64,000 bases of DNA from IMGVR_UViG_3300032288_004964:186001-250000; one strand, 5' to 3'; numbered from the stretch's first letter, positions 5,879-60,539 are shown. Notes: generated from the letters alone by a model not told the origin. Translations and numbers: made by a program.

Positions 5879-6091
5879 ATGAAAGTAGATAACTATTACT
5901 TAGATCTTAAAAAAGTATCTGAGATAAAAGACAAACAAGAAAGAGAGCAAATTCACTCTTATTACCGTGATATGTTACATTGTAACTTTGATGGTAGAAC
6001 CGAAATGGCTCAATCTTATATGAACACTCTTTTGAAATCTGGATATTTAGTTGATATAAGAAATGAAAAAATAGACCAAATTCTAAGCTAA
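5879..6091 (+). CDS. Small hypothetical protein with C-terminal RNEKIDQIL motif
   Basis: ATG at 5879 follows the previous stop; tightly coupled to the next gene. Confidence 0.55.
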   Translation: MKVDNYYLDLKKVSEIKDKQEREQIHSYYRDMLHCNFDGRTEMAQSYMNTLLKSGYLVDIRNEKIDQILS

Positions 6092-6447
6092 TGACTATAC
6101 AAACATCAATATTAGATTACATGGGAAAAATTGAACAAAGTATCTTTGTTTTAGTTTCTTTTGTTTATAATGATAAGTATTATGAAGGTATTTTTGTTTA
6201 TACAAATGAACAAATAATGCTTAATGTTGATGATGAATTAGAAGAAGTCTTAGGATGCACAATCAAGAAGCATAAGGAATATGAGGATATATTAAGATTC
6301 CTAATTAAAAATGTAGTTCCTTGGAGTGAAATGATAAATAGAATAGATGATATTGATTTATCAGTATATGAGCCGGTAACATCAGAAACGGTAGTTTTAG
6401 CTCAAGATATAGATAGTGACCAAATTACCTCAGCCACACAATCATAA
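6091..6447 (+). CDS. Hypothetical protein
   Basis: 118-aa ORF, stop/start overlap with the upstream gene. Confidence 0.6.
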   Translation: MTIQTSILDYMGKIEQSIFVLVSFVYNDKYYEGIFVYTNEQIMLNVDDELEEVLGCTIKKHKEYEDILRFLIKNVVPWSEMINRIDDIDLSVYEPVTSETVVLAQDIDSDQITSATQS

Positions 6448-6500
6448 TTACTAAACTTAAACTGGTTATTTCTATATAAAAATAAAAATAATCAATATTA

Positions 6501-8240
6501 ATGTTAATTAATGAACTAGGAATCAGAGGATTCAAAAGTTATGGCAATAACGAACAAATTTTAAAACTAAATACAGAAAGGGGGGAATTAATTCTCCTTG
6601 TTGGTAATAATGGTGCTGGTAAATCATCACTATTAGATTCATTTGATTATACAATTTACGGTAAAGTAAGAGGCCGTAAAAAAAGATGGGCTACACTTTC
6701 TACTCTGCCAAACCGTATAAACGGTGAACTATTAAATCGCATTAAATTTATTTCTAATGGAACTGAAGTTGAAATTAAAAGAGGTATATCTCCTAGTGTA
6801 TTAGAACTTTGGGAAAATGGAATTCTAAATGAAAGAGCCGGTAAATCTAATATAGATGAAAAGATTGAAGGATATGTTGGAATGGATATAGAAACATTCA
6901 AATCCTTTATCTCAATGTCAATAAATGATTTCAAAAATTTTATTTCACTTTCAAATGAAGAAAAACAATTACTACTTGATAAGTTATTTAACTTAGAAGT
7001 AATTAACATTCTTAACAATATCCTAAAAGATATTAACAAGAATAATAAAATCAGAATGGCTTCTCTGGATTCTGAAATCAGAACTTTAGATGATTCTATT
7101 GCTTCTATTAAAAGATCCATAGATAAAGCTATTGAAAGAGAAAAAGAAGAAGCTAGATTAGCAGCAGAAAGAGAAAAAGAAGATATTCAATCTGAAATTG
7201 ATAAGTTAGTTGAGGAAATGAACTCTAAAAAAGATGATTATAAAAGTCTTAAAGATAAGATGGATAAAATCAAAGAAAAAGAGAATGAACTCAATGAAGA
7301 GATTGATAAAGAAAAGAAGCAATATATCAATTGTCAAAATGATATTAAAAATGTTCAAAGAGAATTAGATTTATATGATTCTGGTAAATGTCCTACTTGT
7401 AAAACTGATTTTGATTCAGAACACTTTTCTAATTTAAGAACCGCTTTAGAAGAAAAGAAAAAAGGATTTGAAGATATTAAACTTGAAATTGAAGAGAATA
7501 TTAAAAAAGTTAAAGAAAGACAAGTTAAGTTAAAAACACTTTCTGAAAGCACAACAACTGCTTTTAATGATTTAAGTTATTTATTGAAAAATTACAAATC
7601 AGATATTGATAAGTTAACACAAAAGAAAGCTAATCAATCTGCTCAACCTGTTACAAAATCATCTGTTAATGTTCAAGAGTTTCAAAATACAATTACTGAA
7701 CTTGAAGATAAAAAAACAATTAGCTCAGATAGTGTTACTGTTTGTAAAGAGAAAGAACTTTACTACAAGGAAATGAATAGAATATTTGGTGAAGATGGTG
7801 TTAAAAAATCAATTATTGCTGGTATTATTAAACCAATCAACCACTTTATTTCCGAGAATATTAAGAAGATGGGTCTTAACTTTGAAGTTAAGTTAGATGA
7901 AACATTCACCGCTGAAATTAGACAATTAGGTTCAGTTATTGAACATGATTCTTTATCAACTGGAGAAACTAAAAAGATAAATATTGGCATCTTAATTGCT
8001 TACTTAAAATTAATTAGAACTAAGCGTCATATCAACATACTTTTCTTAGATGAGGTTTTCTCTTCAATTGACATAGAAGGTATAGATTCTATTTTGGCTC
8101 TCTTAAAATCATTTGCAAATGATTATAACATCAATATATTTGTTGTTCATCATGCTATTTTGAATCAAGAAATGTTTGATAGAATTCTGAAAATTAATAA
8201 AGAGGTTTTTTCTTCCATAGAGGAAGTTGTTTATGAATAA
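6501..8240 (+). CDS. Rad50/SbcC/T4 gp46-like recombination ATPase
   Basis: Walker A GNNGAGKSS, coiled coils with Zn-hook CPTC, signature LSTGE, Walker B LFLDEVFS and D-loop. Confidence 0.9.
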   Translation: MLINELGIRGFKSYGNNEQILKLNTERGELILLVGNNGAGKSSLLDSFDYTIYGKVRGRKKRWATLSTLPNRINGELLNRIKFISNGTEVEIKRGISPSVLELWENGILNERAGKSNIDEKIEGYVGMDIETFKSFISMSINDFKNFISLSNEEKQLLLDKLFNLEVINILNNILKDINKNNKIRMASLDSEIRTLDDSIASIKRSIDKAIEREKEEARLAAEREKEDIQSEIDKLVEEMNSKKDDYKSLKDKMDKIKEKENELNEEIDKEKKQYINCQNDIKNVQRELDLYDSGKCPTCKTDFDSEHFSNLRTALEEKKKGFEDIKLEIEENIKKVKERQVKLKTLSESTTTAFNDLSYLLKNYKSDIDKLTQKKANQSAQPVTKSSVNVQEFQNTITELEDKKTISSDSVTVCKEKELYYKEMNRIFGEDGVKKSIIAGIIKPINHFISENIKKMGLNFEVKLDETFTAEIRQLGSVIEHDSLSTGETKKINIGILIAYLKLIRTKRHINILFLDEVFSSIDIEGIDSILALLKSFANDYNINIFVVHHAILNQEMFDRILKINKEVFSSIEEVVYE

Positions 8241-8529
8241 GATAGATGAATTATTAATAGAAATGTTTGAATCTAAAAGATTGAAAAGTGAGGCTATAAG
8301 ATATCAGAAATATGAAGATGCTGCCTCTGCTAGAGATAAAGAAAGACAATTATCAGAACAGTTATATAAACTTATTATAGGAAGAGATGATGTTGGATTT
8401 ATTAAATGGGTTGAATGTGAGAAGGCGGTAGATGATTATTGTAAAGAAAAATATGGATTTTCATATATTGATTCTGATTCATTGGTTCAATTAAAAAGAC
8501 AAATTGCCCTTAAGAATTTAGGTATTTAA
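8233..8529 (+). CDS. UVR (UvrB/C-motif) domain small protein
   Basis: KSEAIRYQKYEDAASARDKERQL resembles the UVR coiled-coil motif. Confidence 0.5.
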   Translation: MNKIDELLIEMFESKRLKSEAIRYQKYEDAASARDKERQLSEQLYKLIIGRDDVGFIKWVECEKAVDDYCKEKYGFSYIDSDSLVQLKRQIALKNLGI

Positions 8530-8553
8530 TATATAAACAAAATTAAATCAAAT

Positions 8554-9246
8554 ATGAAATTAAAATTCACATTACTATTTTCACTAATTAGTTTATTAAG
8601 TTTTTCACAAGTAGACACAGTTACAATTAAACATTCAGGTTACACAACTCTTTGGAGTTCAACTTTAGATTATCCACTTATGGTTCAATGGTGGGACACA
8701 AAGTTAAGATGTGATTGTAATAGAATACCAAGAAAAGATGATTTTGGACCAGATCCGGCTTTGGTAAAACAAACAGATATTCAAAGTGAATATGATTCTG
8801 CTAATAAAACGGAAAAAGCTAAAGGTCTTAAAGGATTCGATAGAGGTCATATGACACCAGCGGCTGATAATCAATGTCCTTTAGTAAACAATGGTAAAAA
8901 AATTACTGCTGAAAAGTTACAAGAAGAGTGTTTTTATTTCACAAATATGGCTCCTCAATATCACTCATTAAATGCTGGTGATTGGAAAAAGCTAGAAGAA
9001 AGAACAAGAGAATTAACAACAACATATGATTCAGTTTATGTTTGGTGTGGTTCTGTGGGAACTAAAATGACAATTGATGGATTACATATTCCTACTAAAT
9101 GTTGGAAAGTTATTTACATTAAGAAAACTAAAACTTATGAATGTTATATCTTTAATAACACACCAGATAAACCAGTTGGTTTAGACAAGTGGAAAGTTAG
9201 AAAAGAGGAAGTTGAAAAATTAACAGGGTTTAAACTCAACTTATAA
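8554..9246 (+). CDS. Exported DNA/RNA non-specific endonuclease (NucA/EndoG family)
   Basis: N-terminal signal-like peptide; catalytic DRGH motif, FYFTNMAPQ...LNAGDWKKLE and IPTKCWKV motifs. Confidence 0.85.
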   Translation: MKLKFTLLFSLISLLSFSQVDTVTIKHSGYTTLWSSTLDYPLMVQWWDTKLRCDCNRIPRKDDFGPDPALVKQTDIQSEYDSANKTEKAKGLKGFDRGHMTPAADNQCPLVNNGKKITAEKLQEECFYFTNMAPQYHSLNAGDWKKLEERTRELTTTYDSVYVWCGSVGTKMTIDGLHIPTKCWKVIYIKKTKTYECYIFNNTPDKPVGLDKWKVRKEEVEKLTGFKLNL

Positions 9247-9268
9247 TTAACTTATTCATAAAATTAAA

Positions 9269-9496
9269 ATGAAAGCAAATATCCTAAATAATGTAATTGT
9301 GACTGGATCTGGAATTGCAATTGACAATTCTTCTGGATCAATAAATGTATCAATGAATTCTGATTTAATTCAGTTTCAGGAACTTATTTTAGCGGCACTT
9401 GGTGTTGACATCACATATGAGCAATTTTGTTCAATGTCAAATGATGAAAGAAAATCATTAATCAGAGATATAAAAATAAATAGAATATTATGTTAA
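9269..9496 (+). CDS. Small hypothetical protein with C-terminal RDIKINRIL motif
   Basis: 75-aa ORF. Confidence 0.5.
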   Translation: MKANILNNVIVTGSGIAIDNSSGSINVSMNSDLIQFQELILAALGVDITYEQFCSMSNDERKSLIRDIKINRILC

Positions 9497-9681
9497 TAAT
9501 AGAAGTTAATGAAAAGCAACCAATTGAGAAAGCTCTTAAAAAGTATAAGAAGAAATTTGACAAAATTAAAATTCTTAGAGAACTTAGAAACAGAAAAGAG
9601 TTTACTAAAAAATCTGTCAATAAAAGAGAGAAACTTAAAAAGGCTATTTATTTACAAAAGAAGTTTGGCAATAATGAGTAA
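9490..9681 (+). CDS. rpsU: 30S ribosomal protein bS21 (phage-encoded)
   Basis: MLIIEV..IEKALKKYKKKF...LRELRNRKEFTKKSV matches the Bacteroidota-type S21 pattern. Confidence 0.85.
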   Translation: MLIIEVNEKQPIEKALKKYKKKFDKIKILRELRNRKEFTKKSVNKREKLKKAIYLQKKFGNNE

Positions 9682-9919
9682 AGAATATATTGATATACCA
9701 CAATCACACTTATCAATGTGTTGTCCTAAATGTGGTTCTGAAAATGTCAAAAGAAGATTTATTGTATCTGTATCTAATTATGGACATTTACCAAATAAAA
9801 AACCAGTAGATATTTGTAGTGATTGTAGGTTCGAATCTATTGAATCCTTTACAGATATAAATTTTAGAAATAATAGAAATAAAAAAATTGAACAAATATT
9901 AAAAGAAGATGGGATTTAA
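9674..9919 (+). CDS. Small Zn-ribbon protein with C-terminal RNKKIEQIL motif
   Basis: Likely start ATG 9674 overlapping the rpsU end; CPKCGS...CSDC. Confidence 0.55.
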   Translation: MSKEYIDIPQSHLSMCCPKCGSENVKRRFIVSVSNYGHLPNKKPVDICSDCRFESIESFTDINFRNNRNKKIEQILKEDGI

Positions 9920-19665: not shown

Positions 19666-20046
19666 ATGGAAAAGAAAAAAATCGAATTGGAATCACGTAT
19701 TTCCGAAATTATCAAAATGGATAATAAATGTCATGCTCATTTTGAATATAATAAATCTAATATCACCATAACAACATTTAATCCAATAAAGAATGAAACA
19801 TTCTTACTACTTAATATACCTTGTAGTAATGAAGTAGAAGGTTTGGAAAAAGCTTTAATTTGGGTTAAAGAACATTCAAGAGAAGAAGTATCTCATACAG
19901 TTATTTGGACAAAAAGAGGAGAAGCAAGTACATATAAATCATATTTTTACGCTTCAAATATGAGAAAAGTAATTGATAAATTTTATCATGATAAAAATGA
20001 ATTAGATTATATTATCTATGAAATTAAAGTAAATCCAATATCATGA
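19666..20046 (+). CDS. Hypothetical protein
   Basis: 126-aa ORF in operon. Confidence 0.55.
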   Translation: MEKKKIELESRISEIIKMDNKCHAHFEYNKSNITITTFNPIKNETFLLLNIPCSNEVEGLEKALIWVKEHSREEVSHTVIWTKRGEASTYKSYFYASNMRKVIDKFYHDKNELDYIIYEIKVNPIS

Positions 20047-20381
20047 TAAATATCTTAAAGTTTGATAATTATCGAGATGGTGGTACTATTGCTCTAAAGT
20101 GTAATATAGGTGGAACACAATGGTCTAAGTATCTATCTGACCATCATTTAAATAATGATGAGTATGAGATTTGCTTAGATGGAAGATCTGGTAAAGAACC
20201 TAAAATTTGGTTGGGTTATCCTGGTTCAGAAGACTCTCAATTAATTGAGGAAAAGGAACTGATTGATGATATTATTAAGAGAATAGAGTCATTTAAAAAG
20301 ACTCAAAATTGGAGAATGGATCAATTTATTAATTTTGAAGCAAATGTAAGAGATTGGAAAATTAAAAATATATTAAAATGA
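20043..20381 (+). CDS. Hypothetical protein with C-terminal RDWKIKNIL motif
   Basis: 112-aa ORF, ATGA overlap. Confidence 0.55.
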   Translation: MINILKFDNYRDGGTIALKCNIGGTQWSKYLSDHHLNNDEYEICLDGRSGKEPKIWLGYPGSEDSQLIEEKELIDDIIKRIESFKKTQNWRMDQFINFEANVRDWKIKNILK

Positions 20382-20656
20382 AAGAAGACTTTTTAGACAT
20401 ATATAAAAAATACTCAAAGAGTAAATTTGGAAAATATCATATCTCATATGATCCAGCTAATGAATCATTTGAAGTGAATGGATATCATGATAGTTCTAGT
20501 AGTTGGGGATATGAGGATTTAATTAAATATGCTACAGATTATTATAATGATCATACTATTGTAATGCCCGAAACTCCTGAAGAAAAAGCAGCTCGTGAGT
20601 TAAAAGAAAAGGCTATTAATCGAAATGAAAAAATAGATAAAATTTTAGGAGAATAA
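20378..20656 (+). CDS. Hypothetical protein with C-terminal RNEKIDKIL motif
   Basis: 92-aa ORF, ATGA overlap. Confidence 0.55.
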   Translation: MKEDFLDIYKKYSKSKFGKYHISYDPANESFEVNGYHDSSSSWGYEDLIKYATDYYNDHTIVMPETPEEKAARELKEKAINRNEKIDKILGE

Positions 20657-21216
20657 TGTCACAAATATCAATTATGAATTGGATTATGGCTTTTTTAATA
20701 GTAGTGCCTTTATTTGCTTTTTTTATTTCTATTCCAAGTTTCTCATCTATGTATAAGATTGGATTCAAATATTATTTTAAACAATTATCACTTCTAAGAA
20801 TAATGTTAAAGAAATTATCTCTTAGTTATAAAATTACTAAGCCTCAAACATATACATATACATATGGTAATTCTCAAATATCAAAATCTACAGTTATTGA
20901 AACCAATTACTTTTTTCCCATCTTTATTAATAAAGATCGCCTTTTAGTTATTTCTAAAAAAGAGGGAAAATTTAATACTTTGTATATTCAAGATTGTACT
21001 CAGAAAGATAGTGAATGGATAAGTAATAGTATTGAGATAAAAACATCTACCTGTTTATTAACACAAATTCTAAATGATAAGTTACAAAGAAAAGTTGATA
21101 ATCTTATGAAAGAATCTATTCAACTTGAAGATGTTGAAAATTTAAATGAATTATTGAATAGTGAAATAACTTCTATTAAAAGAGAAGATAAACTTAAAGC
21201 CTTGTTAGATGGATAA
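20656..21216 (+). CDS. Membrane-anchored hypothetical protein with C-terminal REDKLKALL motif
   Basis: N-terminal hydrophobic helix; 186 aa. Confidence 0.55.
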   Translation: MSQISIMNWIMAFLIVVPLFAFFISIPSFSSMYKIGFKYYFKQLSLLRIMLKKLSLSYKITKPQTYTYTYGNSQISKSTVIETNYFFPIFINKDRLLVISKKEGKFNTLYIQDCTQKDSEWISNSIEIKTSTCLLTQILNDKLQRKVDNLMKESIQLEDVENLNELLNSEITSIKREDKLKALLDG

Positions 21217-24180: not shown

Positions 24181-25299
24181 TTATTTGTTTTTACTTTTAA
24201 ATTCTTTCTTATCAGAAGAGATGTGAAATTTATCAAAGTCATAGTATTTATCATAGACTTCTCTAATTTTCTTTAGATTTACCTTATCTAAGATGTCATA
24301 TACTGACCAACCTTCTGGGTTAATCCACTGATTAACATTTTTATATCTTAAGATTTCATCTTTTTGTTTTCTTACTTTATAGTAATCTTTAACAAGGTCA
24401 AATCTTTCTTTTATTAAATACTTATCAGGATTATTAATTACTAATTTAGTAGCTTCTAAAACCTCATCAAAGTTTTTATTTGATGTTAAAGTTGAAATTG
24501 TATTAATTCCTTGATTATTCATTCTTGATTGATAACAATGAACATAGTAAACTAATCCTTTTTTCTCTCTAATTTCTTGATATAAAGGAGATTTCAAACC
24601 TAATGATAACATCGCATTTATGAAATGAACATAAGCAAAATCTTCTTCAATAATAGGTGAAAGAATAGCAATAGATGTTTTATCTTTGAATTCATTGTTT
24701 AACTCAAGTGTATTATTATAATCACCAAACTTAGTTACTTTTTCAATTTTTCTTTCAGCAAACTCAATAGTATTGTTTTTATATTGTTTGTTTTTAGAAA
24801 CATTTATAATTTTAGTTGGCTTAGCATATTGTAATTCAAAGAAATTAAGACAATCCATAAACTTAAGATTCTCTAAATCTTCATTAAGACCAATTGGGTC
24901 AAAATCATTAAATAATTTACGAGAAAGATTTAACATATGTGATTGAGTTTGGTCATTAAATGAATCCATATACTCTTCAAGAACAATATTTCTTTCATTT
25001 TCAAATTGTTCTTTAGTAACATTAAATTGACCAAGTAAGTTCATAAACTCACCTTTCCATTTATTTACTTTTTCATCTAATCCAGTTAAATAGAAAACAA
25101 TTTCATTTGATGATGTGTATGCGTTCCAGTCTATAGAATCCCTATCAAAGTCTTCTTGTAGATGATCAAAGTTCTTGCACATCAAATGTTCCATAAGATG
25201 ACTGATTCCATACCATCCCTTCTTCTCAAGGTTTGTTGAACCTTCGTATACAACATAGAACCCAGAAAGTTCTGTCTCGCTTTTTAAATTAATTATCAT
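24181..25299 (-). CDS. M16 (insulinase-family) zinc peptidase
   Basis: Inverted zinc motif HLMEH, NAYTS and ERNIVLEE motifs. Confidence 0.85.
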   Translation of the reverse strand: MIINLKSETELSGFYVVYEGSTNLEKKGWYGISHLMEHLMCKNFDHLQEDFDRDSIDWNAYTSSNEIVFYLTGLDEKVNKWKGEFMNLLGQFNVTKEQFENERNIVLEEYMDSFNDQTQSHMLNLSRKLFNDFDPIGLNEDLENLKFMDCLNFFELQYAKPTKIINVSKNKQYKNNTIEFAERKIEKVTKFGDYNNTLELNNEFKDKTSIAILSPIIEEDFAYVHFINAMLSLGLKSPLYQEIREKKGLVYYVHCYQSRMNNQGINTISTLTSNKNFDEVLEATKLVINNPDKYLIKERFDLVKDYYKVRKQKDEILRYKNVNQWINPEGWSVYDILDKVNLKKIREVYDKYYDFDKFHISSDKKEFKSKNK

Positions 25300-28630: not shown

Positions 28631-29359
28631 ATGATAGTTATTTGTAAAAAAGCAACAAAGAAAATGGTTAAAGGACTTCGATATGAAGTTTTAAATCTAC
28701 ATAATGACGGCACCAGTCAAAGATGGCAAGAAGGTAAGGTAGAAATTCTTGGATTTGGTAGATTTGTAGTAGGTAATTTTACAGACACTGATGGTAATCC
28801 TCTTCCAAAAATTAAAATAGTAAATCCTATTCCTCGTGTAGCAAATTTAGAATTTACTACCTTAAGAAAAGGTGATATACTTGTTTGTAAATCAGACCGT
28901 TATAAAACAATAGCTAAAGGAGCTATGTATAAAATAGAGTCTCTGAAAGAAGTAGTAACTACAAAGGTTGGATGGAATAAACAACCATATAATCATACTG
29001 AAAGAACTATTAAACTTGAAGGTCTACCAAGGTCTATGAAGTTTAAATCTTGGGTTTTTAGAAAATTAACACCTGAAGAAAGTAGAGAAATTAATTTAAA
29101 TAAAATTCTTCACAATGAAGATGCTAAAATAGTTACCGACTCTAAAACTAGAAAAATAGAATTAGTAATTAATAAAAATTTAGAATTAATGAAAAATCTT
29201 TCTAAATCTATTATAGATGAAAATAGACATCATCTTTCTATATTAGATTGGTCTTGTTATAAAACAGGATCTACAATGGGTATTGTAAAGGAAGACTACA
29301 ATGAACTTATGAATATGTCTCTAAAAGATATTTTAGGACTAATAGAAACTTCTAAATAA
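28631..29359 (+). CDS. Hypothetical protein
   Basis: 242-aa ORF. Confidence 0.6.
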   Translation: MIVICKKATKKMVKGLRYEVLNLHNDGTSQRWQEGKVEILGFGRFVVGNFTDTDGNPLPKIKIVNPIPRVANLEFTTLRKGDILVCKSDRYKTIAKGAMYKIESLKEVVTTKVGWNKQPYNHTERTIKLEGLPRSMKFKSWVFRKLTPEESREINLNKILHNEDAKIVTDSKTRKIELVINKNLELMKNLSKSIIDENRHHLSILDWSCYKTGSTMGIVKEDYNELMNMSLKDILGLIETSK

Positions 29360-29622
29360 TGAAGTATAACAAAGGTGATATTATAGTTTGTTCTAACAAT
29401 AAAATTAATTCATATGAATATAACCTTGTAGTAGGTGATAAATATGAGATTATTGGATCTATGCTAATTCACGGTGGTGGAAATGATGGACTTAGTAAAG
29501 TAGCATTAGATGTTAGAAAATGTAATAGTAATGACAATACTGTCCAATACATGCAGCCGGATAATTTATTTATACCACTTGATGTTTATAGAGAGTTTAA
29601 GTTAAGACAAATTTTGGATTAA
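29359..29622 (+). CDS. Small hypothetical protein with C-terminal REFKLRQIL motif
   Basis: 87 aa, stop/start overlap. Confidence 0.55.
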   Translation: MKYNKGDIIVCSNNKINSYEYNLVVGDKYEIIGSMLIHGGGNDGLSKVALDVRKCNSNDNTVQYMQPDNLFIPLDVYREFKLRQILD

Positions 29623-45926: not shown

Positions 45927-47795
45927 ATGATAGAACAATTAAAAGAACAGATTATTAAAGCCAATGATGCTTATCGCTCTGGTAAATCTATAATTTCAGA
46001 TGTTAAATATGACCAACTAATTGAAGAATTATCTTTACTATCACCTGATGATGAACTACTTACAAAAGTAGGACATGTGGTTGTTGATGAAACTCGTAAG
46101 AGTAAACTACCTATTGAAATGGCTTCAATGAATAAAATTAAGTCTATGGGAGACATAGATAATTGGACTCGTCTTAAAGGAATAAATCAAAATGAATTAG
46201 TTATAATGACACCTAAGTTTGATGGTCTTTCTCTTTGTGTTAAAGAAGATGATAATGAAGCTTGGACTCGTGGTGATGGTGAATTTGGTCAAAAATCTGA
46301 CGAACACTATAAACTAATTCAAAATCACTTATATGAAGATGGATTTACTGATGATACAACCGATCCATTTGCACCCATTGAATTCAAATATACTTATGGT
46401 GAGGTGATGATGCCTAAGAAAGTATTCATTGATAAATATTCTACTGACTTTGCTAATCCAAGAAACTTGGTAGCTGGTCTTATTAATAATAAAGAAGCTA
46501 CAAATCCTTTATCAGATTGTCAGTATATTAAATATGGTGGAATGCCTTCCAAAGCTTTTAATCCAAAAACTAAAAAAGAAATACTTGATACTCTTAACAA
46601 TGGCCAGAGAAGTAAAGTAAACTATCATATCTGTAAAGTTTCTGAATTAACAGAAGAACTACTAATCGGATTATTCCATAAGTGGTCTGTTGATTTTGAA
46701 ATTGATGGAATTATTATTGAAATTAATGACTTAACATTACAAAATAAATTAGGTCGCGAAACCTCATCAAACAATCCTGTTTGGGCTCGCGCTTTCAAAC
46801 ATCCTTCTTTTGAACAATCTGCTGAAACAGATGTTATTGGAATCTCTTGGAATATTTCTAAACAAGGTTTATTAAAACCAACTCTACATATTAATCCTGT
46901 TAAATTAGACGGTGTTACAGTGTCTAATGTTACTGGTAACAATGCTCGTTTTGTAAAAGACTTAGGACTTGGTGTAGGTGCTAAAGTAGTTGTAAAACGC
47001 TCAGGAATGGTTATTCCAATCATTGCTGATGTTATCAAACCCGTTGATTTTGTTCAACCTACTATTGATGGAGTTGAAATAGATTGGAATGAGGCTGGCA
47101 TTGAGTTAATTACTTTAACAGAAACTGACGATCAAAAATTAAAAAAGATTGTTGCTTTCTTTGAAATCTTAGAAGCAGACAATGTGTCAGAAGGAGTTAT
47201 TACTCAACTATGGGATGCTGGTTATAAAACAATAAAAGATATTTTAAGTCTAAAAACTTCTGACTTAGAAAAAATTGACAGATTTGGTAAGCGTAAGGCT
47301 CAAATTGTTTTTGATTCAATTCAAAAATCTGTTAGTAATGTTCAGTTGTCTAAACTACAACACGCTACTGGTATCTTCAAAGGATTAGGATCTAAGAAAT
47401 TAGTTCTTTTAGAAGATTTCAAAACTAAACCAACTATTGACCAAGTAATGTCAATTGAAGGATTTGCTGAAGTATCTGCTAAATCATATATTGATTCATA
47501 TGATGTATTCTTTGATTTTATCAAAGATTTGCCTGTCACAATTGTAGAAAAAGTAGAAGCTGCAAAAGTTGGCACGGATCTTGATGGTAAACAATTTGTA
47601 TTTACTGGAGTAAGACGTGCTGATTTAGAATCAGTTATTGAATCCCGTGGTGGTAAGATTGGTAGTGGTGTATCTAAAAATACAACATATTTAGTTATGA
47701 AAGCAGTAGGTAGTGGTTCTTCTAAAGAGAAGAAGGCTATTGAATTGGGAGTACAAGTTATTACAGTTGAACAATTAGAAAAATTATTATCATGA
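45927..47795 (+). CDS. ligA: NAD-dependent DNA ligase
   Basis: Adenylation motif PKFDG, TRGDGEFG, NPRNLVAG, EIDGIII, OB fold (RSGMVIP), HhH motifs, C-terminal BRCT (GKQFVFTG...GVSKNT); no Zn-finger cysteines. Confidence 0.92.
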   Translation: MIEQLKEQIIKANDAYRSGKSIISDVKYDQLIEELSLLSPDDELLTKVGHVVVDETRKSKLPIEMASMNKIKSMGDIDNWTRLKGINQNELVIMTPKFDGLSLCVKEDDNEAWTRGDGEFGQKSDEHYKLIQNHLYEDGFTDDTTDPFAPIEFKYTYGEVMMPKKVFIDKYSTDFANPRNLVAGLINNKEATNPLSDCQYIKYGGMPSKAFNPKTKKEILDTLNNGQRSKVNYHICKVSELTEELLIGLFHKWSVDFEIDGIIIEINDLTLQNKLGRETSSNNPVWARAFKHPSFEQSAETDVIGISWNISKQGLLKPTLHINPVKLDGVTVSNVTGNNARFVKDLGLGVGAKVVVKRSGMVIPIIADVIKPVDFVQPTIDGVEIDWNEAGIELITLTETDDQKLKKIVAFFEILEADNVSEGVITQLWDAGYKTIKDILSLKTSDLEKIDRFGKRKAQIVFDSIQKSVSNVQLSKLQHATGIFKGLGSKKLVLLEDFKTKPTIDQVMSIEGFAEVSAKSYIDSYDVFFDFIKDLPVTIVEKVEAAKVGTDLDGKQFVFTGVRRADLESVIESRGGKIGSGVSKNTTYLVMKAVGSGSSKEKKAIELGVQVITVEQLEKLLS

Positions 47796-48166
47796 TATTA
47801 TTTTTAGGAATTATTATAGGATTTATATTAGGTCTTCCAATTGGTTTTATCAAGTGGAAGAAAAAACCCGCTATTGAGAAATACTCAAGAAGGGGTTTAT
47901 TAGAAAAGAGTTTTTCTGTTATGGGTATGGTTGAAAAAGAAACAGTTGATGTTTTATTTGAGATTGGTGAGTTAGAATCAACTGATGTATTATCAAAAAT
48001 TGAAGTCATTAATCTCAAACCAAATAAGTCAGAGTATAATTCAGAGTATAATAAAAAAAGATTAACGGATATGGTTGATAATTCTTGGGTAAATAGTAAA
48101 GATATTACCTGGATTACAACTGCTGCTGATACAAGAAATAAAAAAATAGACCAAATACTTAATTAA
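47792..48166 (+). CDS. Membrane-anchored hypothetical protein with C-terminal RNKKIDQIL motif
   Basis: N-terminal TM helix; ATGA overlap. Confidence 0.55.
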   Translation: MILFLGIIIGFILGLPIGFIKWKKKPAIEKYSRRGLLEKSFSVMGMVEKETVDVLFEIGELESTDVLSKIEVINLKPNKSEYNSEYNKKRLTDMVDNSWVNSKDITWITTAADTRNKKIDQILN

Positions 48167-48167: not shown

Positions 48168-48464
48168 ATGAATTTTGAAGATTTAGTACTTCCTCATATT
48201 ATGTATATTTCTTTTCCTGATTCTGAAAGGATAGGGCTGTGGTACTTAGGTGGAGAACCAGAGGAAAATCATAGTAGATTAACTGTTGGTAAATTGTATC
48301 ATCTTAATACAAAGCTATACTCACCAACCAGAGATATAGAAAGAGTTAAGGTTTGGACTACAGAAGATAATGAAAATAGAGGAAGACTTTGTAAAGTTAA
48401 GTTAGAAAATTTTGGTACCTTAGCTGACTTAAGAAATAAAAAAATAGAACAAATATTAAAATAA
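48168..48464 (+). CDS. Hypothetical protein with C-terminal RNKKIEQIL motif
   Basis: 98 aa. Confidence 0.55.
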   Translation: MNFEDLVLPHIMYISFPDSERIGLWYLGGEPEENHSRLTVGKLYHLNTKLYSPTRDIERVKVWTTEDNENRGRLCKVKLENFGTLADLRNKKIEQILK

Positions 48465-48863
48465 ATGGCACTGACTTGTCCTAAATGTGAAAAAACAAAC
48501 AAATGTGATTGTAAAACTTGCAACCCAGATGGTACCGCAACTGATTTAGTTATTATACTTGAAGATGAAAGACTTTATCAATGTTGTTTTTGTGGTCATA
48601 AGTTTGATGAACAAGACTCATTAGATTTTGACTGGGATAGAATGATTGCTCATATTGCTGAAAAAGCAACACCCGAATTGTGTTTAGAGTGGTTGTCATT
48701 AGTTCATAAGGAAAGAATTGCTTTAGAGGAAAAGGTTGGTGTAGGTGAGTTTGGATTTGAACAAGCATTTAGATATCATTTCAAAATGAATTGGGGTGAT
48801 TGCGATAGAGCAACATTTATAACACTTAAAAGAGATTTAAAAATAAATAAAATTATAAATTAA
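48465..48863 (+). CDS. Cys-rich Zn-binding hypothetical protein with C-terminal RDLKINKII motif
   Basis: CPKC..CDCKTC...CCFC. Confidence 0.55.
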   Translation: MALTCPKCEKTNKCDCKTCNPDGTATDLVIILEDERLYQCCFCGHKFDEQDSLDFDWDRMIAHIAEKATPELCLEWLSLVHKERIALEEKVGVGEFGFEQAFRYHFKMNWGDCDRATFITLKRDLKINKIIN

Positions 48864-48864: not shown

Positions 48865-49380
48865 ATGGGTTGTGACATACACTTTTTTACCGAAAGATGG
48901 ACTTCAGACAATAAATATGAAGGTCCAAAAGATTTAGCTGAAGATAGAGATTCTAAGCTAGAAGAAATATTAGAAAATACCGAACCTACTTATAGGTGGG
49001 TTTCTGCTGATAAGTGGTCCACTGATAGATATGGTGATGATAGTTGGTCTGCGGATGAACTTTATGGTGGTAGAAACTATTTTCTATTTGCTGTTTTAGC
49101 TGATGTAAGAAATGGATACGATATAGATCCGATAGATTACCCAAGGGGAATACCTGATGATTTATCATCTGGATATAAGTATATTACAAATAGATGGGAT
49201 GGTGATGGACATTCACACTCTTATTTTACTTTAGATGAATTACTAAATGTTAATTGGTCAAAATATGAAAAATCGGATAGAGTAGGTTGGTTATATGAGT
49301 TTATGGAAACTATTGAACAAATGAAATCTATTGATCCTGATCCAAAAAATGTAAGATGTTGTTTCTTTTTTGACAACTAA
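48865..49380 (+). CDS. Conserved phage hypothetical protein (MGCDIH...RNYFLFAVLADVRN...FFFDN)
   Basis: Motif pattern commonly seen in phage hypothetical proteins; 171 aa. Confidence 0.6.
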   Translation: MGCDIHFFTERWTSDNKYEGPKDLAEDRDSKLEEILENTEPTYRWVSADKWSTDRYGDDSWSADELYGGRNYFLFAVLADVRNGYDIDPIDYPRGIPDDLSSGYKYITNRWDGDGHSHSYFTLDELLNVNWSKYEKSDRVGWLYEFMETIEQMKSIDPDPKNVRCCFFFDN

Positions 49381-52127: not shown

Positions 52128-52705
52128 TGAAAGATATTAATTATCTATTTGATCTATTAAAGCAATCTAATGTATCTCTTTTAGGATATACATTTAGACA
52201 AGAAAGACTCAAAGACGAGATTATTTCAAAATTACCTCATGTTGTAATTCCGGAAATAGACTCGTCTTTTTCTTTTAAATCTTTTTTAAGAGATTTGAAA
52301 TTAAAATCAATTTTAGAAACTGGAGAGATTGTAAATAATCCAGAGTATTTTGTTTTAGATTTAAATAATATCAGATCTGTTGAGTCTGATATAATTGGTA
52401 GACAAAGACAAATAAAGAGTATTGTAAATAACATTGTGGTGAGTAGCATGTCTATGTCTCATTCTTATAAACTTTTATTACTTACTACACTATATAAAAG
52501 TGGAACTAATACAGATAATTCTGATATTACAAATTTTTCAGGAGGTAGTCAACCAATCTATATGAGTGATATTGCTATTGTAATGAAAGATAAATCTATG
52601 AAGGTAATAAAAAATAGATTTGGTAATGATGGTGATGATATATTAATATCATTTGATAAATTAAAAGAATATAATTACATTTGTAACTATGAACATAACA
52701 ACTAA
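52127..52705 (+). CDS. Hypothetical protein with a DnaB/RecA-like helicase C-terminal-like segment
   Basis: SGGSQPIYMSD...KVIKNRFG; no Walker A motif. Confidence 0.45.
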   Translation: MKDINYLFDLLKQSNVSLLGYTFRQERLKDEIISKLPHVVIPEIDSSFSFKSFLRDLKLKSILETGEIVNNPEYFVLDLNNIRSVESDIIGRQRQIKSIVNNIVVSSMSMSHSYKLLLLTTLYKSGTNTDNSDITNFSGGSQPIYMSDIAIVMKDKSMKVIKNRFGNDGDDILISFDKLKEYNYICNYEHNN

Positions 52706-56764: not shown

Positions 56765-57437
56765 TTTATTCAAAAAAAAGGAAAAAGTGGTAGAACCAGT
56801 TTTACCTAAACCAGTAATATACACAGTTAATAATACAAATTATACTATAGAAGATAGTTTTCCAATAAAGATACAATCACAAGCTGGTGATGTTTCTGTA
56901 TATGGTTATACATTAGAAGTTAGATGGAAAGACCAAAAAGGAGAATGGTATAGTTGGATGACTTACTGGAATCATAGAATCTATGTTAGTAGAAGTTCAG
57001 CTTTAGATGCTGCTATTAAAGTATTCCCAAGCTATAGAGATGGATATGAATGGAGAATAACTCCACTTTACAAAATGACTGAACCAGAATACAGAGATTA
57101 TAAAATTGACCAATTATTATCAGAGAAAAAAGTTAATAGAGAACCAATTGTATATGAGATTAAAGCTTGGAAAGTAAAAGATGATTGTGAAATTCATTAT
57201 GAAAAAACAAACCATACTTACAAATACTCAAAAGGAACTTTATTCATCCAAATGGAGAATGGTAATATTGTAACAATAAAGGATCCAAGGACTTTTGTTG
57301 GATATGGTAGTAGACATCATCTATTTAATGAATTGGTTAAAGATGAAAGAGTAGAAGAAGTAGACATTCAAAATGAAAAGTGGGCACATCCTCACTTATG
57401 TAAAGAATTAAAAACAAAAATAAAAAATAAAAACTAA
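56754..57437 (+). CDS. Hypothetical protein with internal RDYKIDQLL motif
   Basis: 227 aa; overlaps the end of the Pth2-like gene. Confidence 0.6.
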   Translation: MKFNLFKKKEKVVEPVLPKPVIYTVNNTNYTIEDSFPIKIQSQAGDVSVYGYTLEVRWKDQKGEWYSWMTYWNHRIYVSRSSALDAAIKVFPSYRDGYEWRITPLYKMTEPEYRDYKIDQLLSEKKVNREPIVYEIKAWKVKDDCEIHYEKTNHTYKYSKGTLFIQMENGNIVTIKDPRTFVGYGSRHHLFNELVKDERVEEVDIQNEKWAHPHLCKELKTKIKNKN

Positions 57438-58987: not shown

Positions 58988-58993
58988 AAATAT

Positions 58994-59256: not shown

Positions 59257-59262
59257 CAAAAA

Positions 59263-59307: not shown

Positions 59308-59345
59308 GCAACGGTTCATACGGATCGTTGCCCAAACAAGACAAT

Positions 59346-59418: not shown

Positions 59419-59427
59419 CTAAAAATA

Positions 59428-59512: not shown

Positions 59513-59517
59513 CTAAA

Positions 59518-59598
59518 GCTTTCGTCGCTTAGTGGCTATAGCAACTGGCTCTTAACCAGTCGAGAAATCAACCGTGGGTTCGAGTCCCACCGAAAGCA
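59518..59598 (+). tRNA. tRNA-Lys(CUU) with extended variable arm
   Basis: GCTTTCG/CGAAAGC, ACTGG-CTCTTAA-CCAGT, 13-nt variable region C-GA-GAAA-TC-AACC. Confidence 0.88.
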
Positions 59599-59607
59599 CA
59601 AATATAT

Positions 59608-59737
59608 GGGGAGTTAGCTCAGTGGTAGAGTATATATAACCTCTTTTGAAATTTTACCTCACAAGAGTGTTGATTAAAAGAGTTACTTCGTTTGAATTGA
59701 AATCAAAAGGTCATAGGTTCGAATCCTATACTCCCCG
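59608..59737 (+). tRNA. Interrupted tRNA-like gene of uncertain identity, with a 58-nt insertion between the D-arm and anticodon arm
   Basis: GGGGAGT/ACTCCCC acceptor, GCTC-AGTGGTA-GAGT D-arm, ATAGG-TTCGAAT-CCTAT T-arm, TTTGA-ATTGAAA-TCAAA arm. Confidence 0.6.
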
Positions 59738-59756
59738 CAAAAAAGAAAAATAAATT

Positions 59757-59831
59757 ATGAAAAATATTAATACATCAAAGTCGTCAAGTAGTCGCTCGTC
59801 AAGAATGAGTGAGATTCGATTGTATTCATAA
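59757..59831 (+). promoter_or_regulatory. Ser/Arg-rich leader peptide MKNINTSKSSSSRSSRMSEIRLYS
   Basis: 24 aa with 9 Ser and 3 Arg codons, upstream of a terminator and tRNA-Arg plus three tRNA-Ser. Confidence 0.8.
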
Positions 59832-59850
59832 TAGTCAGAAGATATTTATG

Positions 59851-59888
59851 AAACCCTCGAATCTAATGATTTGAGGGTTTTTTATTTT
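59851..59888 (+). terminator. Intrinsic terminator (attenuator) directly upstream of tRNA-Arg
   Basis: AAACCCTCGAATC-TAAT-GATTTGAGGGTTT 13-bp stem (one G-U) plus TTTATTTT. Confidence 0.85.
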
Positions 59889-59893
59889 AATAT

Positions 59894-59967
59894 GGTTCCA
59901 TCGTTCAACTGGATAGGACACTCGGCTACGAACCGAGAGATTGGGGATTCGAATTCCTCTGGAACTA
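59894..59967 (+). tRNA. tRNA-Arg(ACG)
   Basis: GGTTCCA/TGGAACT, CTCGG-CTACGAA-CCGAG, GGGGA-TTCGAAT-TCCTC. Confidence 0.92.
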
Positions 59968-59972
59968 CAAAA

Positions 59973-60059
59973 GGAAAAGTAACTTAGCCGGCGCTAAGCA
60001 CAGTCTTGAAAACTGCTGGTACCTACGGGTATGGGGATCGACACCTCACTTTTTCGCCA
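59973..60059 (+). tRNA. tRNA-Ser(UGA), atypical (6-bp D-stem, can fold 8/4)
   Basis: GGAAAAGT/ACTTTTTC, CTTAGC-CGGC-GCTAAG, CAGT-CTTGAAA-ACTG, long variable arm, GCCA end. Confidence 0.85.
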
Positions 60060-60062
60060 AAT

Positions 60063-60148
60063 GGAGAGTAATCTAGTCTGGTGACTAGCACCGCCTGCTA
60101 AGCGTGTGGTACGTTTAATCGTATGGAGTTCAATTCTTCTACTCTCCG
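60063..60148 (+). tRNA. tRNA-Ser(GCU), 8/4 cloverleaf
   Basis: GGAGAGTA/TACTCTCC 8-bp acceptor, GGAG-TTCAATT-CTTC 4-bp T-stem, CTAGTC-TGGT-GACTAG D-arm, CT-GCT-AA loop. Confidence 0.85.
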
Positions 60149-60153
60149 CAAAA

Positions 60154-60239
60154 GGAAGATAATCTAGTCTGGTGACTAGCCACGCCTGGAAAGCGTTGGG
60201 TGCGTTCAATCGCATGGGATTCGATTTCTCTATCTTCCG
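60154..60239 (+). tRNA. tRNA-Ser(GGA), 8/4 cloverleaf
   Basis: GGAAGATA/TATCTTCC 8-bp acceptor, GGGA-TTCGATT-TCTC 4-bp T-stem, same D-arm, CT-GGA-AA loop. Confidence 0.85.
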
Positions 60240-60242
60240 CAA

Positions 60243-60539
60243 ATGGTAGCAATAGTTAAAATAAAAATTACATACTTTAGAAAGTCAGCAAGTGCTGAAG
60301 ATGGTAGTATTATTTGGGTTTATAAAACTAAAGATGAATCATTACATAACGGTAGTGGAATAAGTGAATCAGCTTTAGACAGAAGTGGTTATAAATTAAT
60401 GAAATATAATAGTGATTTAGAACAATATGCAATTGACTTATCATTTAATGGTAAAAAAGATATAATTTATTCATCAATTGAAAGTGAAATTAGACCTTTA
60501 TTAAGAAACAAATTATTAACAGAATTATTAGAATATTAA
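60243..60539 (+). CDS. Hypothetical protein with C-terminal RNKLLTELL motif
   Basis: 98 aa starting just after the last tRNA. Confidence 0.5.
   Translation: MVAIVKIKITYFRKSASAEDGSIIWVYKTKDESLHNGSGISESALDRSGYKLMKYNSDLEQYAIDLSFNGKKDIIYSSIESEIRPLLRNKLLTELLEY

What the first reader, a model, noticed from the sequence alone, without database searches (positions are those of the whole stretch)
5879..60539. Shared R-x-x-K-(I/L)-x-x-(I/L)-(I/L) tag on about 20 unrelated proteins
The same short basic-amphipathic motif ends many small ORFs: RNEKIDQIL (5879), RDIKINRIL (9269), RNKKIEQIL (9674, 48168), RDWKIKNIL (20043), RNEKIDKIL (20378), REDKLKALL (20656), REFKLRQIL (29359), RNKKIDQIL (47792), RDLKINKII (48465), with looser variants RKETIKRIF (21366), RDKNLEKLD (45664) and RNKLLTELL (60243). 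It also occurs internally in 4610 (RDGKIEAII), 28631 (REINLNKIL), 48865 (RDSKLEEIL), 52127 (RDLKLKSIL) and 56754 (RDYKIDQLL). It attaches to Zn-ribbon, membrane-anchored and fragment-like domains, so it behaves like a portable docking, localisation or degradation signal. It is largely complementary in distribution to the N-terminal capsid-targeting motif, hinting at two parallel protein-addressing systems.
Basis: partly seen in the sequence, partly recalled or inferred. Interest (0 to 1): 0.7.

Follow-up and report, generated by a model that had tools for sequence, protein, structure and literature searches.

The report
Shared C-terminal helix tag, phage proteins
About one in ten proteins of this 385-kb Bacteroidota phage and its huge relatives are small and mutually unrelated, sit mostly in operons with host-type promoters, and end in the same nine-residue amphipathic helix (R-D/N/E-x-K-I-x-x-I-L); this is a real, strongly selected, portable address tag whose reader is still unknown.

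Summary
In the window, 10 ORFs end in R-[DNE]-x-K-[IL]-x-x-[IL]-[IL], 1-5 residues before the stop. In the whole 385-kb genome there are 22 such ORFs, against 0.02 expected from shuffled proteins.

- **Unrelated bodies:** the tagged proteins share no detectable similarity outside the tag.
- **Selection on the peptide:** synonymous codons at the fixed positions follow genome usage, so the peptide is selected, not the DNA.
- **Conservation:** orthologues at 40-65% identity keep the tag.
- **Relatives:** LR745206 and LR756502 are tag-rich (77 tagged ORFs counted in LR745206), as are many IMG/VR fragments. LR756504 uses a second form (R-K-x-[IKR]-I-x-x-L-L, over 100 ORFs). LR756501 uses a third (R-T-x-L-I-D-x-V-L).
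- **Cellular genomes:** the same DNA word is almost never C-terminal there.
- **Timing:** tagged genes lie in runs led by a Bacteroidetes-type promoter motif, not the motif found before head genes.
- **Second tag:** tagged proteins never also carry a T4-CTS-like N-terminal motif found on 40-68 other proteins.

My best reading is a portable docking helix on early proteins, read by one shared partner. That partner may be the phage's own protein-quality-control set (a Clp ATPase without its N-domain, or an M16 peptidase).

The parts
5879..6091 (+). 70-aa ORF ending in the tag RNEKIDQIL-S (tag nt 6059-6085)
   Evidence: Orthologues keep the tag behind a linker of variable length. The AF2 model puts the tag in helix 60-69, with lower confidence than the body.
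9269..9496 (+). 75-aa ORF ending RDIKINRIL-C (tag nt 9464-9490)
   Evidence: The LR745206 orthologue ends RDIKIKRVL.
9509..9919 (+). 136-aa CxxC (Zn-ribbon-like) ORF ending RNKKIEQIL-KEDGI (tag nt 9875-9901)
20043..20381 (+). 112-aa ORF ending RDWKIKNIL-K (tag nt 20349-20375)
20378..20656 (+). 92-aa ORF ending RNEKIDKIL-GE (tag nt 20621-20647)
20656..21216 (+). 186-aa ORF with an N-terminal membrane helix, ending REDKLKALL-DG (tag nt 21181-21207)
   Evidence: The LR745206 orthologue ends RDSKLNLLI.
29359..29622 (+). 87-aa ORF ending REFKLRQIL-D (tag nt 29590-29616)
   Evidence: The orthologue ends REWKLRKIL.
47792..48166 (+). 124-aa ORF with an N-terminal membrane helix, ending RNKKIDQIL-N (tag nt 48134-48160)
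   Evidence: The orthologue ends RNDKIDQIL.
48168..48464 (+). 98-aa ORF ending RNKKIEQIL-K (tag nt 48432-48458)
48465..48863 (+). 132-aa Zn-ribbon plus helical protein ending RDLKINKII-N (tag nt 48831-48857)
   Evidence: Of 116 homologues at 47-100% identity, all but one keep a tag. In the AF2 model (pLDDT 94) the tag lies inside terminal helix 115-131.
4808..4834 (+). Internal copy RDGKIEAII in ORF 4610-5029
   Evidence: Aligned to RDRKIDSIT in the LR745206 orthologue.
29084..29110 (+). Internal loose copy REINLNKIL in ORF 28631-29359
   Evidence: Aligned to REISLNHIL in the orthologue.
48946..48972 (+). Internal copy RDSKLEEIL in ORF 48865-49380
   Evidence: No orthologue was found in LR745206.
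52289..52315 (+). Internal copy RDLKLKSIL in ORF 52127-52705
   Evidence: Aligned to RDIKINQIL in the orthologue.
57093..57119 (+). Internal copy RDYKIDQLL in ORF 56754-57437
   Evidence: Aligned to RDYKINKIL in the orthologue.
24181..25299 (-). M16 zinc peptidase (HLMEH motif), a candidate reader or processor of the tag. This is inference only.
   Evidence: Pfam M16 plus M16_C; sequence. Present in all five complete tag-bearing genomes and absent from four tag-free ones. Preceded by the late-type promoter motif. The complex prediction gave no answer.

Best explanation
The motif is a portable short linear motif that acts at the protein level. It is a C-terminal amphipathic alpha-helix, about 13 residues long with a nine-residue core. 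R1, K4, I5, I8 and L9 lie on one face. It has been appended, through linkers of variable length, to roughly 8-13% of the proteins of a clade of huge T4-like phages of Bacteroidota.

The carriers are small (median about 100 aa), mutually unrelated and turn over quickly. They sit mostly in tightly packed operons led by a host-type promoter motif, so they are probably early accessory proteins.

The tag is read in trans by one shared partner. That partner co-evolves with the tag, which gives three clade-specific forms of it (dialects).

My preferred guess for the consequence is common handling of early proteins (turnover, unfolding or C-terminal processing) by the phage's own protein-quality-control set. 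That set is a Clp/Hsp100 ATPase that has lost its N-domain but keeps a ClpP-docking V-G-F loop, an M16 peptidase, and Hsp70.

Shown: the motif exists, is enriched, is selected as a peptide, is portable, is predicted helical, has dialects, is associated with one promoter type, and excludes the N-terminal tag.

Inferred: that a single reader exists, what it is, and what it does.

For: **Enrichment.**
- 22 C-terminal copies against 0.02 expected.
- 37, 118 and 119 tagged ORFs in three genomes against 1.0, 2.3 and 2.7 expected.

**Peptide-level selection.**
- Synonymous codon use at the fixed positions matches genome usage.
- 12 of 13 orthologue pairs keep the tag at 40-65% identity.
- 115 of 116 members of one family keep it.
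- Internal copies are conserved in orthologues.

**Portability.**
- 273 tagged bodies fall into 221 BLAST clusters.
- Indels occur between body and tag.
- One 58-aa ORF carries two tandem copies.

**Helix.**
- The fixed positions follow i, i+3, i+4, i+7, i+8 spacing.
- AF2 predicts helix 60-69 and helix 115-131 in two carriers.

**Phage speciality.** 54 of 120 matches to the DNA word are C-terminal in viral contigs, against 3 of 120 in cellular genomes.

**Dialects.**

**Timing.** Tagged genes lie under P2 (TAnnTTTG), not P1 (AATATATA, the motif before the capsid, portal and protease genes). G000: 6 P1 / 15 P2 against 209 / 103 for untagged genes (p = 7e-4). LR745206: 13 / 52 against 341 / 239 (p = 2e-9).

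**Candidate readers.**
- No ClpP in the phage.
- The Clp ATPase lacks Clp_N in all tag-rich phages and keeps it in tag-free ones.
- 26 of the 28 tags found next to Clp genes lie beside the N-domain-less form.
- The M16 peptidase is present in 5 of 5 tag-bearing complete genomes and 0 of 4 tag-free ones.
Against: - No reader has been shown.
- The presence/absence profile still fits 59 genes. It is confounded by phylogeny, amounting to about one or two independent events.
- Clp homologues at about 60% identity occur in tag-free jumbo phages.
- LR756501 keeps Clp_N and still has some tags.
- Helical periodicity argues against recognition as an extended peptide by an AAA+ pore or by the Hsp70 substrate groove.
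- Typical Clp degrons are unstructured termini, whereas this helix runs to within 0-2 residues of the end.
- 'Early' and 'late' are inferred from promoter-like motifs only, and the P2 pattern is loose.
- The M16 gene itself carries the late-type motif.
Confidence: 0.45

Rival explanations
1. The tag docks onto a host hub. The many early effectors use one handle to reach a host machine such as RNA polymerase, the ribosome, a sliding clamp, a chaperone or a host protease. The dialects then track different hosts.
For:
- The bodies are orphans that turn over fast, as is typical of takeover or anti-defence genes.
- The I5-x-x-I8-L9 spacing, with D/N/E three residues before I5, echoes the spacing of a clamp-binding PIP box (my own knowledge of PIP boxes).
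Against: - It is unclear why about 100 different proteins would need the same host site.
- No cellular proteins with a C-terminal copy turned up, although that scan was specific to one set of codons.
- The host is unknown, so nothing could be tested.
Confidence: 0.2
2. The tag is a capsid-interior packaging signal. It would work like the T4 capsid targeting sequence (CTS), the C-terminal cargo peptides of encapsulins, or the C-terminal coat-binding helix of scaffolding proteins, loading small proteins into the prohead for ejection.
For: - The phage has a T4-type head module: gp20, gp21 and gp23 homologues.
- In T4, diverse internal proteins share only a short targeting sequence (PMC3012670).
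- A tagged 243-aa partial paralogue of the capsid protein exists in LR745206.
Against: - The phage already has a separate N-terminal CTS-like motif ending in I/F-x-E. It sits on 40-68 proteins, many behind the late-type promoter, and never on a C-tagged protein.
- C-tagged genes are depleted behind the promoter motif that precedes the head genes.
Confidence: 0.1
3. The tag is a self-association module. The helix makes the small proteins form oligomers with themselves or with each other, and there is no dedicated reader.
For: - It is a short amphipathic helix with charged residues beside a hydrophobic stripe.
- One ORF carries two copies in tandem.
Against: - Nine to thirteen residues with three or four hydrophobic positions make a weak oligomerisation unit.
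- R1 and K4 in the middle of the hydrophobic face would repel each other in a homomeric bundle.
- A promiscuous shared zipper would cross-link about 100 unrelated proteins.
- This was not tested by modelling.
Confidence: 0.1
4. The constraint is on the nucleic acid or on translation. The last codons would serve as the leader or re-initiation signal for the abutting downstream gene, or the nascent peptide would act in the ribosome tunnel at termination.
For: - Tagged genes abut or overlap the next gene more often than other small genes do. The fraction with a gap of 5 nt or less is 0.69-0.72 against 0.44-0.53 (p = 0.03 to 2e-6).
- The codons are rich in A and T.
Against: - Synonymous sites vary as in the rest of the genome.
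- The distance from tag to stop varies from 0 to 8 residues.
- Internal copies more than 60 residues from any stop are conserved.
- Tight spacing is expected anyway for genes inside early operon arrays.
Confidence: 0.05
5. The pattern is chance, composition or hidden paralogy. It would be a by-product of K/I/N-rich proteins, or the last conserved remnant of one diverged family.
For: - The proteome is rich in I, K, N and L.
- In LR756504, some tagged genes form small paralogue arrays.
Against: - Shuffles give 0.02 expected against 22 observed.
- Control motifs give 0-2.
- There are 221 BLAST clusters among 273 bodies.
- The bodies include Zn-ribbon, membrane-anchored and all-helical types.
- Lengths range from 41 to 254 aa, with one of 731 aa.
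Confidence: 0.03

Closest known systems
T4 capsid targeting sequence (CTS) of internal proteins
   Same: A short conserved terminal peptide shared by otherwise unrelated, fast-evolving small phage proteins encoded in plastic gene arrays. The host phage has a T4-type head.
   Different: The CTS is N-terminal, is cleaved at L/I-x-E by gp21, and acts late. This tag is C-terminal, lacks that cleavage site, sits behind host-type promoter motifs, and coexists with a separate CTS-like N-terminal motif on other proteins.
C-terminal degrons read by Clp/AAA+ unfoldases (ssrA tag; MuA-type basic C-motif)
   Same: A short C-terminal signal on many unrelated proteins. The phage encodes a Clp/Hsp100 ATPase with a ClpP-docking loop.
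   Different: Known degrons are unstructured and are read at the very end of the chain. This motif has helical periodicity, may be followed by 0-8 residues, and also occurs internally. No degradation has been shown.
Mitochondrial presequences with Tom20 and the M16 processing peptidases MPP and PreP
   Same: An amphipathic helix with Arg/Lys, a hydrophobic phi-x-x-phi-phi core and an invariant Arg. An M16 peptidase co-occurs with the tag.
   Different: Presequences are N-terminal, longer and degenerate in sequence. There is no organelle here. Cleavage by the phage M16 enzyme is untested, and the complex prediction gave no answer.
Encapsulation peptides of bacterial microcompartments and cargo-loading peptides of encapsulins
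   Same: A terminal short peptide or helix joined by a poorly conserved linker, which addresses unrelated cargo to one protein shell.
   Different: No shell genes were identified here. The encapsulin motif (G-S-L-x-I-G-S-L) is unlike this one. The inferred timing points to early, not assembly-stage, expression.
Helical docking motifs such as MIM1 (binds MIT domains) and the PIP box (binds sliding clamps)
   Same: C-terminal placement and one-face spacing: [RK]-[IL]-x-x-[IL] as in MIM1, and polar-x-x-phi-x-x-psi-psi as in PIP boxes.
   Different: The tag lacks the aromatic pair of a PIP box and the leucine and acidic pattern of MIM1. No MIT-domain protein was found, and clamp binding was not tested.

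Membership tests
T4-type capsid targeting sequence | N-terminal position directly after Met | tested here: not met
   The tag lies 0-8 residues from the C-terminus, or internally.
T4-type capsid targeting sequence | Ends in a prohead-protease site L/I-x-E | tested here: not met
   No such site appears in the logo. The separate N-terminal motif does end in I/F-x-E.
T4-type capsid targeting sequence | Carriers are made together with head proteins | tested here: not met
   Tagged genes are depleted behind the promoter motif that precedes the capsid, portal and protease genes. This rests on promoter motifs, not on expression data.
Clp/AAA+ C-terminal degron | A cognate unfoldase is present | tested here: met
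   A Clp/Hsp100 ATPase (AAA_2, ClpB_D2-small, UVR, V-G-F loop) is found in all tag-bearing genomes. The phage has no ClpP.
Clp/AAA+ C-terminal degron | Unstructured extreme C-terminal signal | tested here: not met
   The spacing is helical and AF2 predicts a helix up to the last residue or two. Internal copies exist.
Clp/AAA+ C-terminal degron | The tag shortens protein half-life in a Clp-dependent way | not testable with these tools
   This needs a reporter assay.
Presequence-like signal processed by an M16 peptidase | Amphipathic basic helix with a phi-x-x-phi-phi core | tested here: met
   R1, K4, I5, I8 and L9 lie on one helical face. The comparison with presequences rests on my own knowledge.
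Presequence-like signal processed by an M16 peptidase | N-terminal position and removal after use | tested here: not met
   The tag is C-terminal. Removal could not be tested.
Presequence-like signal processed by an M16 peptidase | The M16 enzyme binds or cleaves the signal | tested here: inconclusive
   The enzyme co-occurs with the tag: 5 of 5 tag-bearing against 0 of 4 tag-free genomes. This is confounded by clade. The complex prediction scored 0.00, which is 'no answer'.
PIP-box or clamp-binding motif | Q-x-x-[ILM]-x-x-[FY]-[FY] with an aromatic pair | tested here: not met
   Positions 8 and 9 are I/L/V, and position 2 is D/E/N, never Q.
Encapsulin cargo-loading peptide | C-terminal G-S-L-x-I-G-S-L-like motif | tested here: not met
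   The logo bears no resemblance to it.
Membrane-targeting amphipathic helix (MinD/FtsA type) | A degenerate hydrophobic/basic helix without fixed residues, usually with aromatic residues | tested here: not met
   R1 and K4 are invariant, position 2 is acidic or amide, and there are no aromatic residues. Membrane binding itself was not tested.

The most novel reading that the evidence does not exclude
Huge T4-like phages of Bacteroidota run their own protein-addressing system. About 100 early proteins per genome carry a presequence-like C-terminal helix. A phage-encoded machine reads it: the Clp unfoldase that has lost its N-domain, working with host ClpP, and/or the M16 peptidase. Tag and reader co-evolve into clade-specific dialects. 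This runs alongside a T4-like N-terminal capsid-targeting tag on late proteins. The phage could then clear or process its whole early proteome in a programmed way.
Probability: 0.25. Interest if true: 0.85.

Novelty: new variant of a known kind. Interest (0 to 1): 0.74.

Why it matters
Terminal address tags shared by many unrelated proteins are known for secretion, organelle import, degradation and T4 capsid loading. I found no report of one that marks about a tenth of a phage proteome, or that comes in clade-specific forms.

If a single reader exists, the tag has three uses:
- It labels a whole functional class among the orphan genes of huge phages, which are otherwise impossible to annotate.
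- It gives a nine-residue handle for pull-downs and reporter fusions.
- It may show how very large phages organise or time their early programme.

It is also a simple sequence marker for this phage clade in metagenomes.

Tried and rejected
- **Family searches.** Pfam and PHROGs on the 22 tagged proteins and on 20 larger tagged proteins from relatives gave nothing, except one weak Zn-ribbon hit and one NUMOD4 hit.
- **Fold search.** Foldseek against the PDB with the Zn-ribbon model found nothing significant.
- **Literature.** Six searches found no description of such a tag. The 'moraphage' paper on large aquatic Bacteroidota phages does not mention one.
- **First complex prediction.** Those rows were not re-sent.
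- **Second complex prediction.** Two copies of the M16 peptidase plus the 70-aa tagged protein gave 'no answer' with a score of 0.00. This is not evidence either way.
- **Too-narrow DNA pattern.** A pattern that required TAA right after the motif was too narrow to be informative.
- **Tags next to Clp genes.** Counting tags in the 10-kb flanks of Clp genes was only weakly informative, because the Clp neighbourhood is poor in small genes.
- **Presence/absence profiling.** Pfam on 30 of them added only methylases, tRNA synthetases, NUDIX and RNA-repair enzymes.
- **Hsp70 as reader.** I consider it unlikely. It is also present in the tag-free Lak-A1 phage, and helical spacing does not suit its substrate groove.
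- **DNA-level element.** A promoter or mobile cassette at the DNA level is rejected by the synonymous-codon test.

Full report
**What the window is.**
- The window is 28% GC. It lies at 186001-250000 of a single 385,333-bp virus contig rated 95% complete.
- Its nearest public relatives are the 'uncultured phage' genomes LR745206 (634,780 bp) and LR756502 (642,428 bp).
- The genome has a T4-type head module: gp20-like portal, gp21-like prohead protease and gp23-like capsid protein. It also has a gp46-like nuclease.
- One window protein carries a CHU_C type IX secretion sorting domain. This points to a Bacteroidota host. That fits a paper on large aquatic Bacteroidota phages whose shared genes include a ClpA-like ATPase and a peptidase (PMC12619734); I did not check whether those phages are the same lineage.

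**Check of the observation.**
- A six-frame scan for R-x-x-K-[IL]-x-x-[IL]-[IL] gives 17 hits in the window. Ten lie 1-5 residues before the stop of a + strand ORF of 70-186 aa. Four lie inside longer ORFs. Three are in short non-coding frames.
- Position 2 is always D, N or E.
- In the whole genome (462 crude ORFs) there are 29 matches, 22 of them within 8 residues of the C-terminus. The expectation from 200 per-protein shuffles is 0.27 and 0.02. Reversed or re-spaced control motifs give 0-2.
- The N-terminal bodies have no BLAST similarity to each other.
- They have no Pfam or PHROG family apart from one weak Zn-ribbon hit.

**Protein or DNA?**
- At the fixed positions, synonymous codons (AGA/AGG/CGN, AAA/AAG, ATA/ATT/ATC, TTA/TTG/CTN) occur in the same proportions as in the genome at large. 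This holds both here and in LR745206.
- The tag follows gene orientation on both strands.
- Orthologous pairs between this genome and LR745206 are 40-65% identical overall, yet 12 of 13 keep the tag.
- In one family of 116 homologues (47-100% identity), all but one keep it. R1 is more than 90% conserved, and K4 is sometimes T or I.
- Internal copies are conserved at aligned positions in the four carriers that have an orthologue.
- Selection therefore acts on the peptide.

**Anatomy of the tag.** A logo from 220 non-redundant tagged proteins reads:
- position -3: K/L/I/T; position -2: S/Q/E; position 0: I/L;
- R1, [D>E>N]2, x, K4, [I>L]5, [N/D/K/E]6, x, [I>L]8, [L>I]9, [K/N/D]10;
- then 0-8 more residues, most often one.

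The fixed positions have i, i+3, i+4, i+7, i+8 spacing, which puts them on one face of a helix. Orthologues differ by insertions just upstream of R1. AF2 models of two carriers put the tag in a terminal helix:
- residues 60-69 of the 70-aa protein, where the body has pLDDT 86-96 and the tag about 67;
- residues 115-131 of the Zn-ribbon protein, with overall pLDDT 94.

One 58-aa ORF carries two copies in tandem, RDYKIDYIL-RNEKIKNIL. This fits a nine-residue unit.

**Scale and distribution.**
- LR745206 has 77 C-terminal copies among 947 ORFs.
- A degenerate DNA pattern gives 79 and 71 matches in LR745206 and LR756502, against 7 and 4 for the reversed control.
- A single-codon-choice DNA word finds more than 116 IMG/VR contigs. 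Of 120 matches, 54 are in frame behind an ORF of at least 30 aa and within 8 residues of a stop. One 7.8-kb stretch holds nine tagged ORFs. Five of the tag-rich contigs were checked, and all are 8-52% complete fragments of phages of roughly 200-330 kb.
- The same word occurs 120 or more times in prokaryotic genomes, but only 3 of 120 matches are C-terminal. The rest lie inside ordinary proteins.
- The more distant LR756504 lacks this form. De novo enrichment shows its own form, R-K-x-[I/K/R]-I-x-x-L-[L/I/N], at the very C-terminus. 'R...I..L' occurs in 108 of 907 C-termini against 2 expected.
- LR756501 has a third form, R-T-x-L-I-D-x-[V/A/M]-L, with six copies in the 255 kb sampled.
- No enrichment of the R-type tag patterns was found in LR756500, Lak-A1 or four unrelated complete jumbo phages; de novo C-terminal enrichment, run on LR756500 and one of the four, found no tag either.
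- With a wider regex, 37 of 462, 118 of 947 and 119 of 928 ORFs are tagged, against 1.0, 2.3 and 2.7 in shuffles. The 273 bodies form 221 BLAST clusters.
- Very few tagged proteins are shared between the first clade and LR756504. The bodies turn over while the tag persists.

**Context of the tagged genes.**
- Upstream regions hold two enriched motifs.
  - P1, (T)AATATATA, lies 12-35 nt before the start of the capsid, portal and protease genes and of many large genes. I read it as a late promoter.
  - P2, TAnnTTTG, matches what I know as the Bacteroidetes -7 promoter element. I read it as host-dependent and early.
- Each gene was assigned to the nearest upstream motif in its same-strand run. 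Tagged genes are 6 P1 / 15 P2 against 209 / 103 for the rest here (p = 7e-4). In LR745206 the figures are 13 / 52 against 341 / 239 (p = 2e-9). LR756504 shows the same trend without significance.
- Tagged genes abut or overlap the next gene more often than other small genes do, as expected inside tight early arrays.
- A second motif, M-[KR]-[HY]-[LI]-K-x-[YF]-x-x-F-E, sits at the N-terminus of 40 proteins here and 68 in LR745206. It resembles the T4 capsid targeting sequence and ends in a gp21-like I/F-x-E site. Many of its carriers have P1. None carries the C-terminal tag, where 2.4 and 6.7 overlaps were expected.
It argues against capsid loading as the job of the C-terminal tag. In T4, diverse internal proteins likewise share only the CTS (PMC3012670).

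Sixty-nine genes are present in this genome, LR745206 and LR756504 but absent from tag-free LR756500. Those with a recognisable function include a proteostasis set:
- **Hsp70.** It also occurs in tag-free Lak-A1.
- **A 711-aa Clp/Hsp100 ATPase** (AAA_2, AAA_lid_9, ClpB_D2-small, UVR motif).
  - It has a V-G-F loop, which I know as the ClpP-docking loop of ClpC-type proteins. The phage has no ClpP.
  - It is present in every tag-bearing genome tested and absent from LR756500 and Lak-A1.
  - Homologues at about 60% identity exist in tag-free jumbo phages.
  - All phages rich in the first two tag forms have a version without the Clp_N domain (648-729 aa). The tag-free phages, and LR756501 with its few tags, keep Clp_N (744-907 aa).
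  - Of 28 tags found within 10 kb of 80 viral Clp genes, 26 lie beside the N-domain-less form.
- **A 372-aa M16 zinc peptidase** with the HLMEH motif, inside the window.
  - It is present in all five complete tag-bearing genomes and in none of the four tag-free ones.
  - It is very conserved, at 82-100% identity over more than 120 clusters.
  - It is preceded by P1.

These associations are suggestive but confounded by phylogeny, and 59 genes still fit the strict profile. The single complex prediction available (M16 dimer plus a tagged protein) gave no answer.

**Conclusion.** The tag is real. It is a portable, helical, peptide-level signal on about a tenth of the proteome of a clade of huge phages, and it comes in clade-specific forms. 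It marks a class of probably early proteins distinct from the CTS-like late class. That it is read by one shared partner is the most economical inference. The identity of that partner and the outcome (turnover, processing, recruitment) remain open. My preference for the phage's own Clp or M16 machinery is a hypothesis with roughly one-in-four odds.

Noticed in passing
window 2308-3252, 3254-3997, 22593-23168(-), 26350-26856(-), 26989-27525(-), 30424-30873; genome-wide in G000 and LR745206: An N-terminal motif M-[KR]-[HY]-[LI]-K-x-[YF]-x-x-F-E sits on 40 ORFs here and 68 in LR745206. It resembles the T4 capsid targeting sequence and ends in a gp21-like I/F-x-E site. Many carriers have the late-type promoter motif. 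None has the C-terminal tag.
   Followed up: partly
upstream of window genes, e.g. those starting at 2308, 4013, 4252, 5227, 5605, 8554, 21573, 25539 and 30424; genome-wide: A promoter-like motif (T)AATATATA lies 12-35 nt before about 115 start codons. These include the capsid, portal and prohead protease genes. It is probably the late promoter of this phage group. A second class, TAnnTTTG, looks like the Bacteroidetes -7 element.
   Followed up: partly
LR756500.1 (loci L326-L349), e.g. record positions 11706-17016: A different C-terminal motif, ...YEHLxNADDFGFFDN, ends at least 14 ORFs of 160-370 aa in this tag-free relative. It may be a paralogue family or another tail-type docking motif.
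   Followed up: no
   Followed up: no
L029:7176-7907 (LR745206 207176-207907); also L078, L092, L099: A tagged protein of about 245 aa is a partial paralogue (26-28% identity) of the gp23-like major capsid protein. The gene is absent from the syntenic position in G000; similar-length tagged ORFs with a like C-terminus occur on several IMG/VR contigs.
   Followed up: no
L012:15157-17292 (G000 285157-287292): The phage Clp/Hsp100 ATPase lacks the Clp_N domain. It keeps the acidic linker and a V-G-F loop, and the phage has no ClpP. Homologues in other jumbo phages keep Clp_N.
   Followed up: partly
window 24181-25299 (-): A short (372-aa) M16 peptidase with an intact HxxEH site is unusually conserved, at 82-100% identity across more than 120 sequence clusters. 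187 cluster representatives of this short subfamily are found at E below 1e-30.
   Followed up: partly
window 50363-50450 and 58912-59968: Seven tRNA genes: Ser(tga), Phe, His, Lys(ttt) twice, Lys(ctt) and Arg(acg). Six of them form one cluster.
   Followed up: no
window 30908-35551 (-): A 1547-aa protein carries a PKD domain and a C-terminal CHU_C type IX secretion sorting domain. This is a host-like feature that points to Bacteroidota.
   Followed up: no
G000 264465-265922, 271877-273511, 332913-334802: The phage encodes two class I Glu/Gln-type tRNA synthetases and a full-length Hsp70.
   Followed up: no
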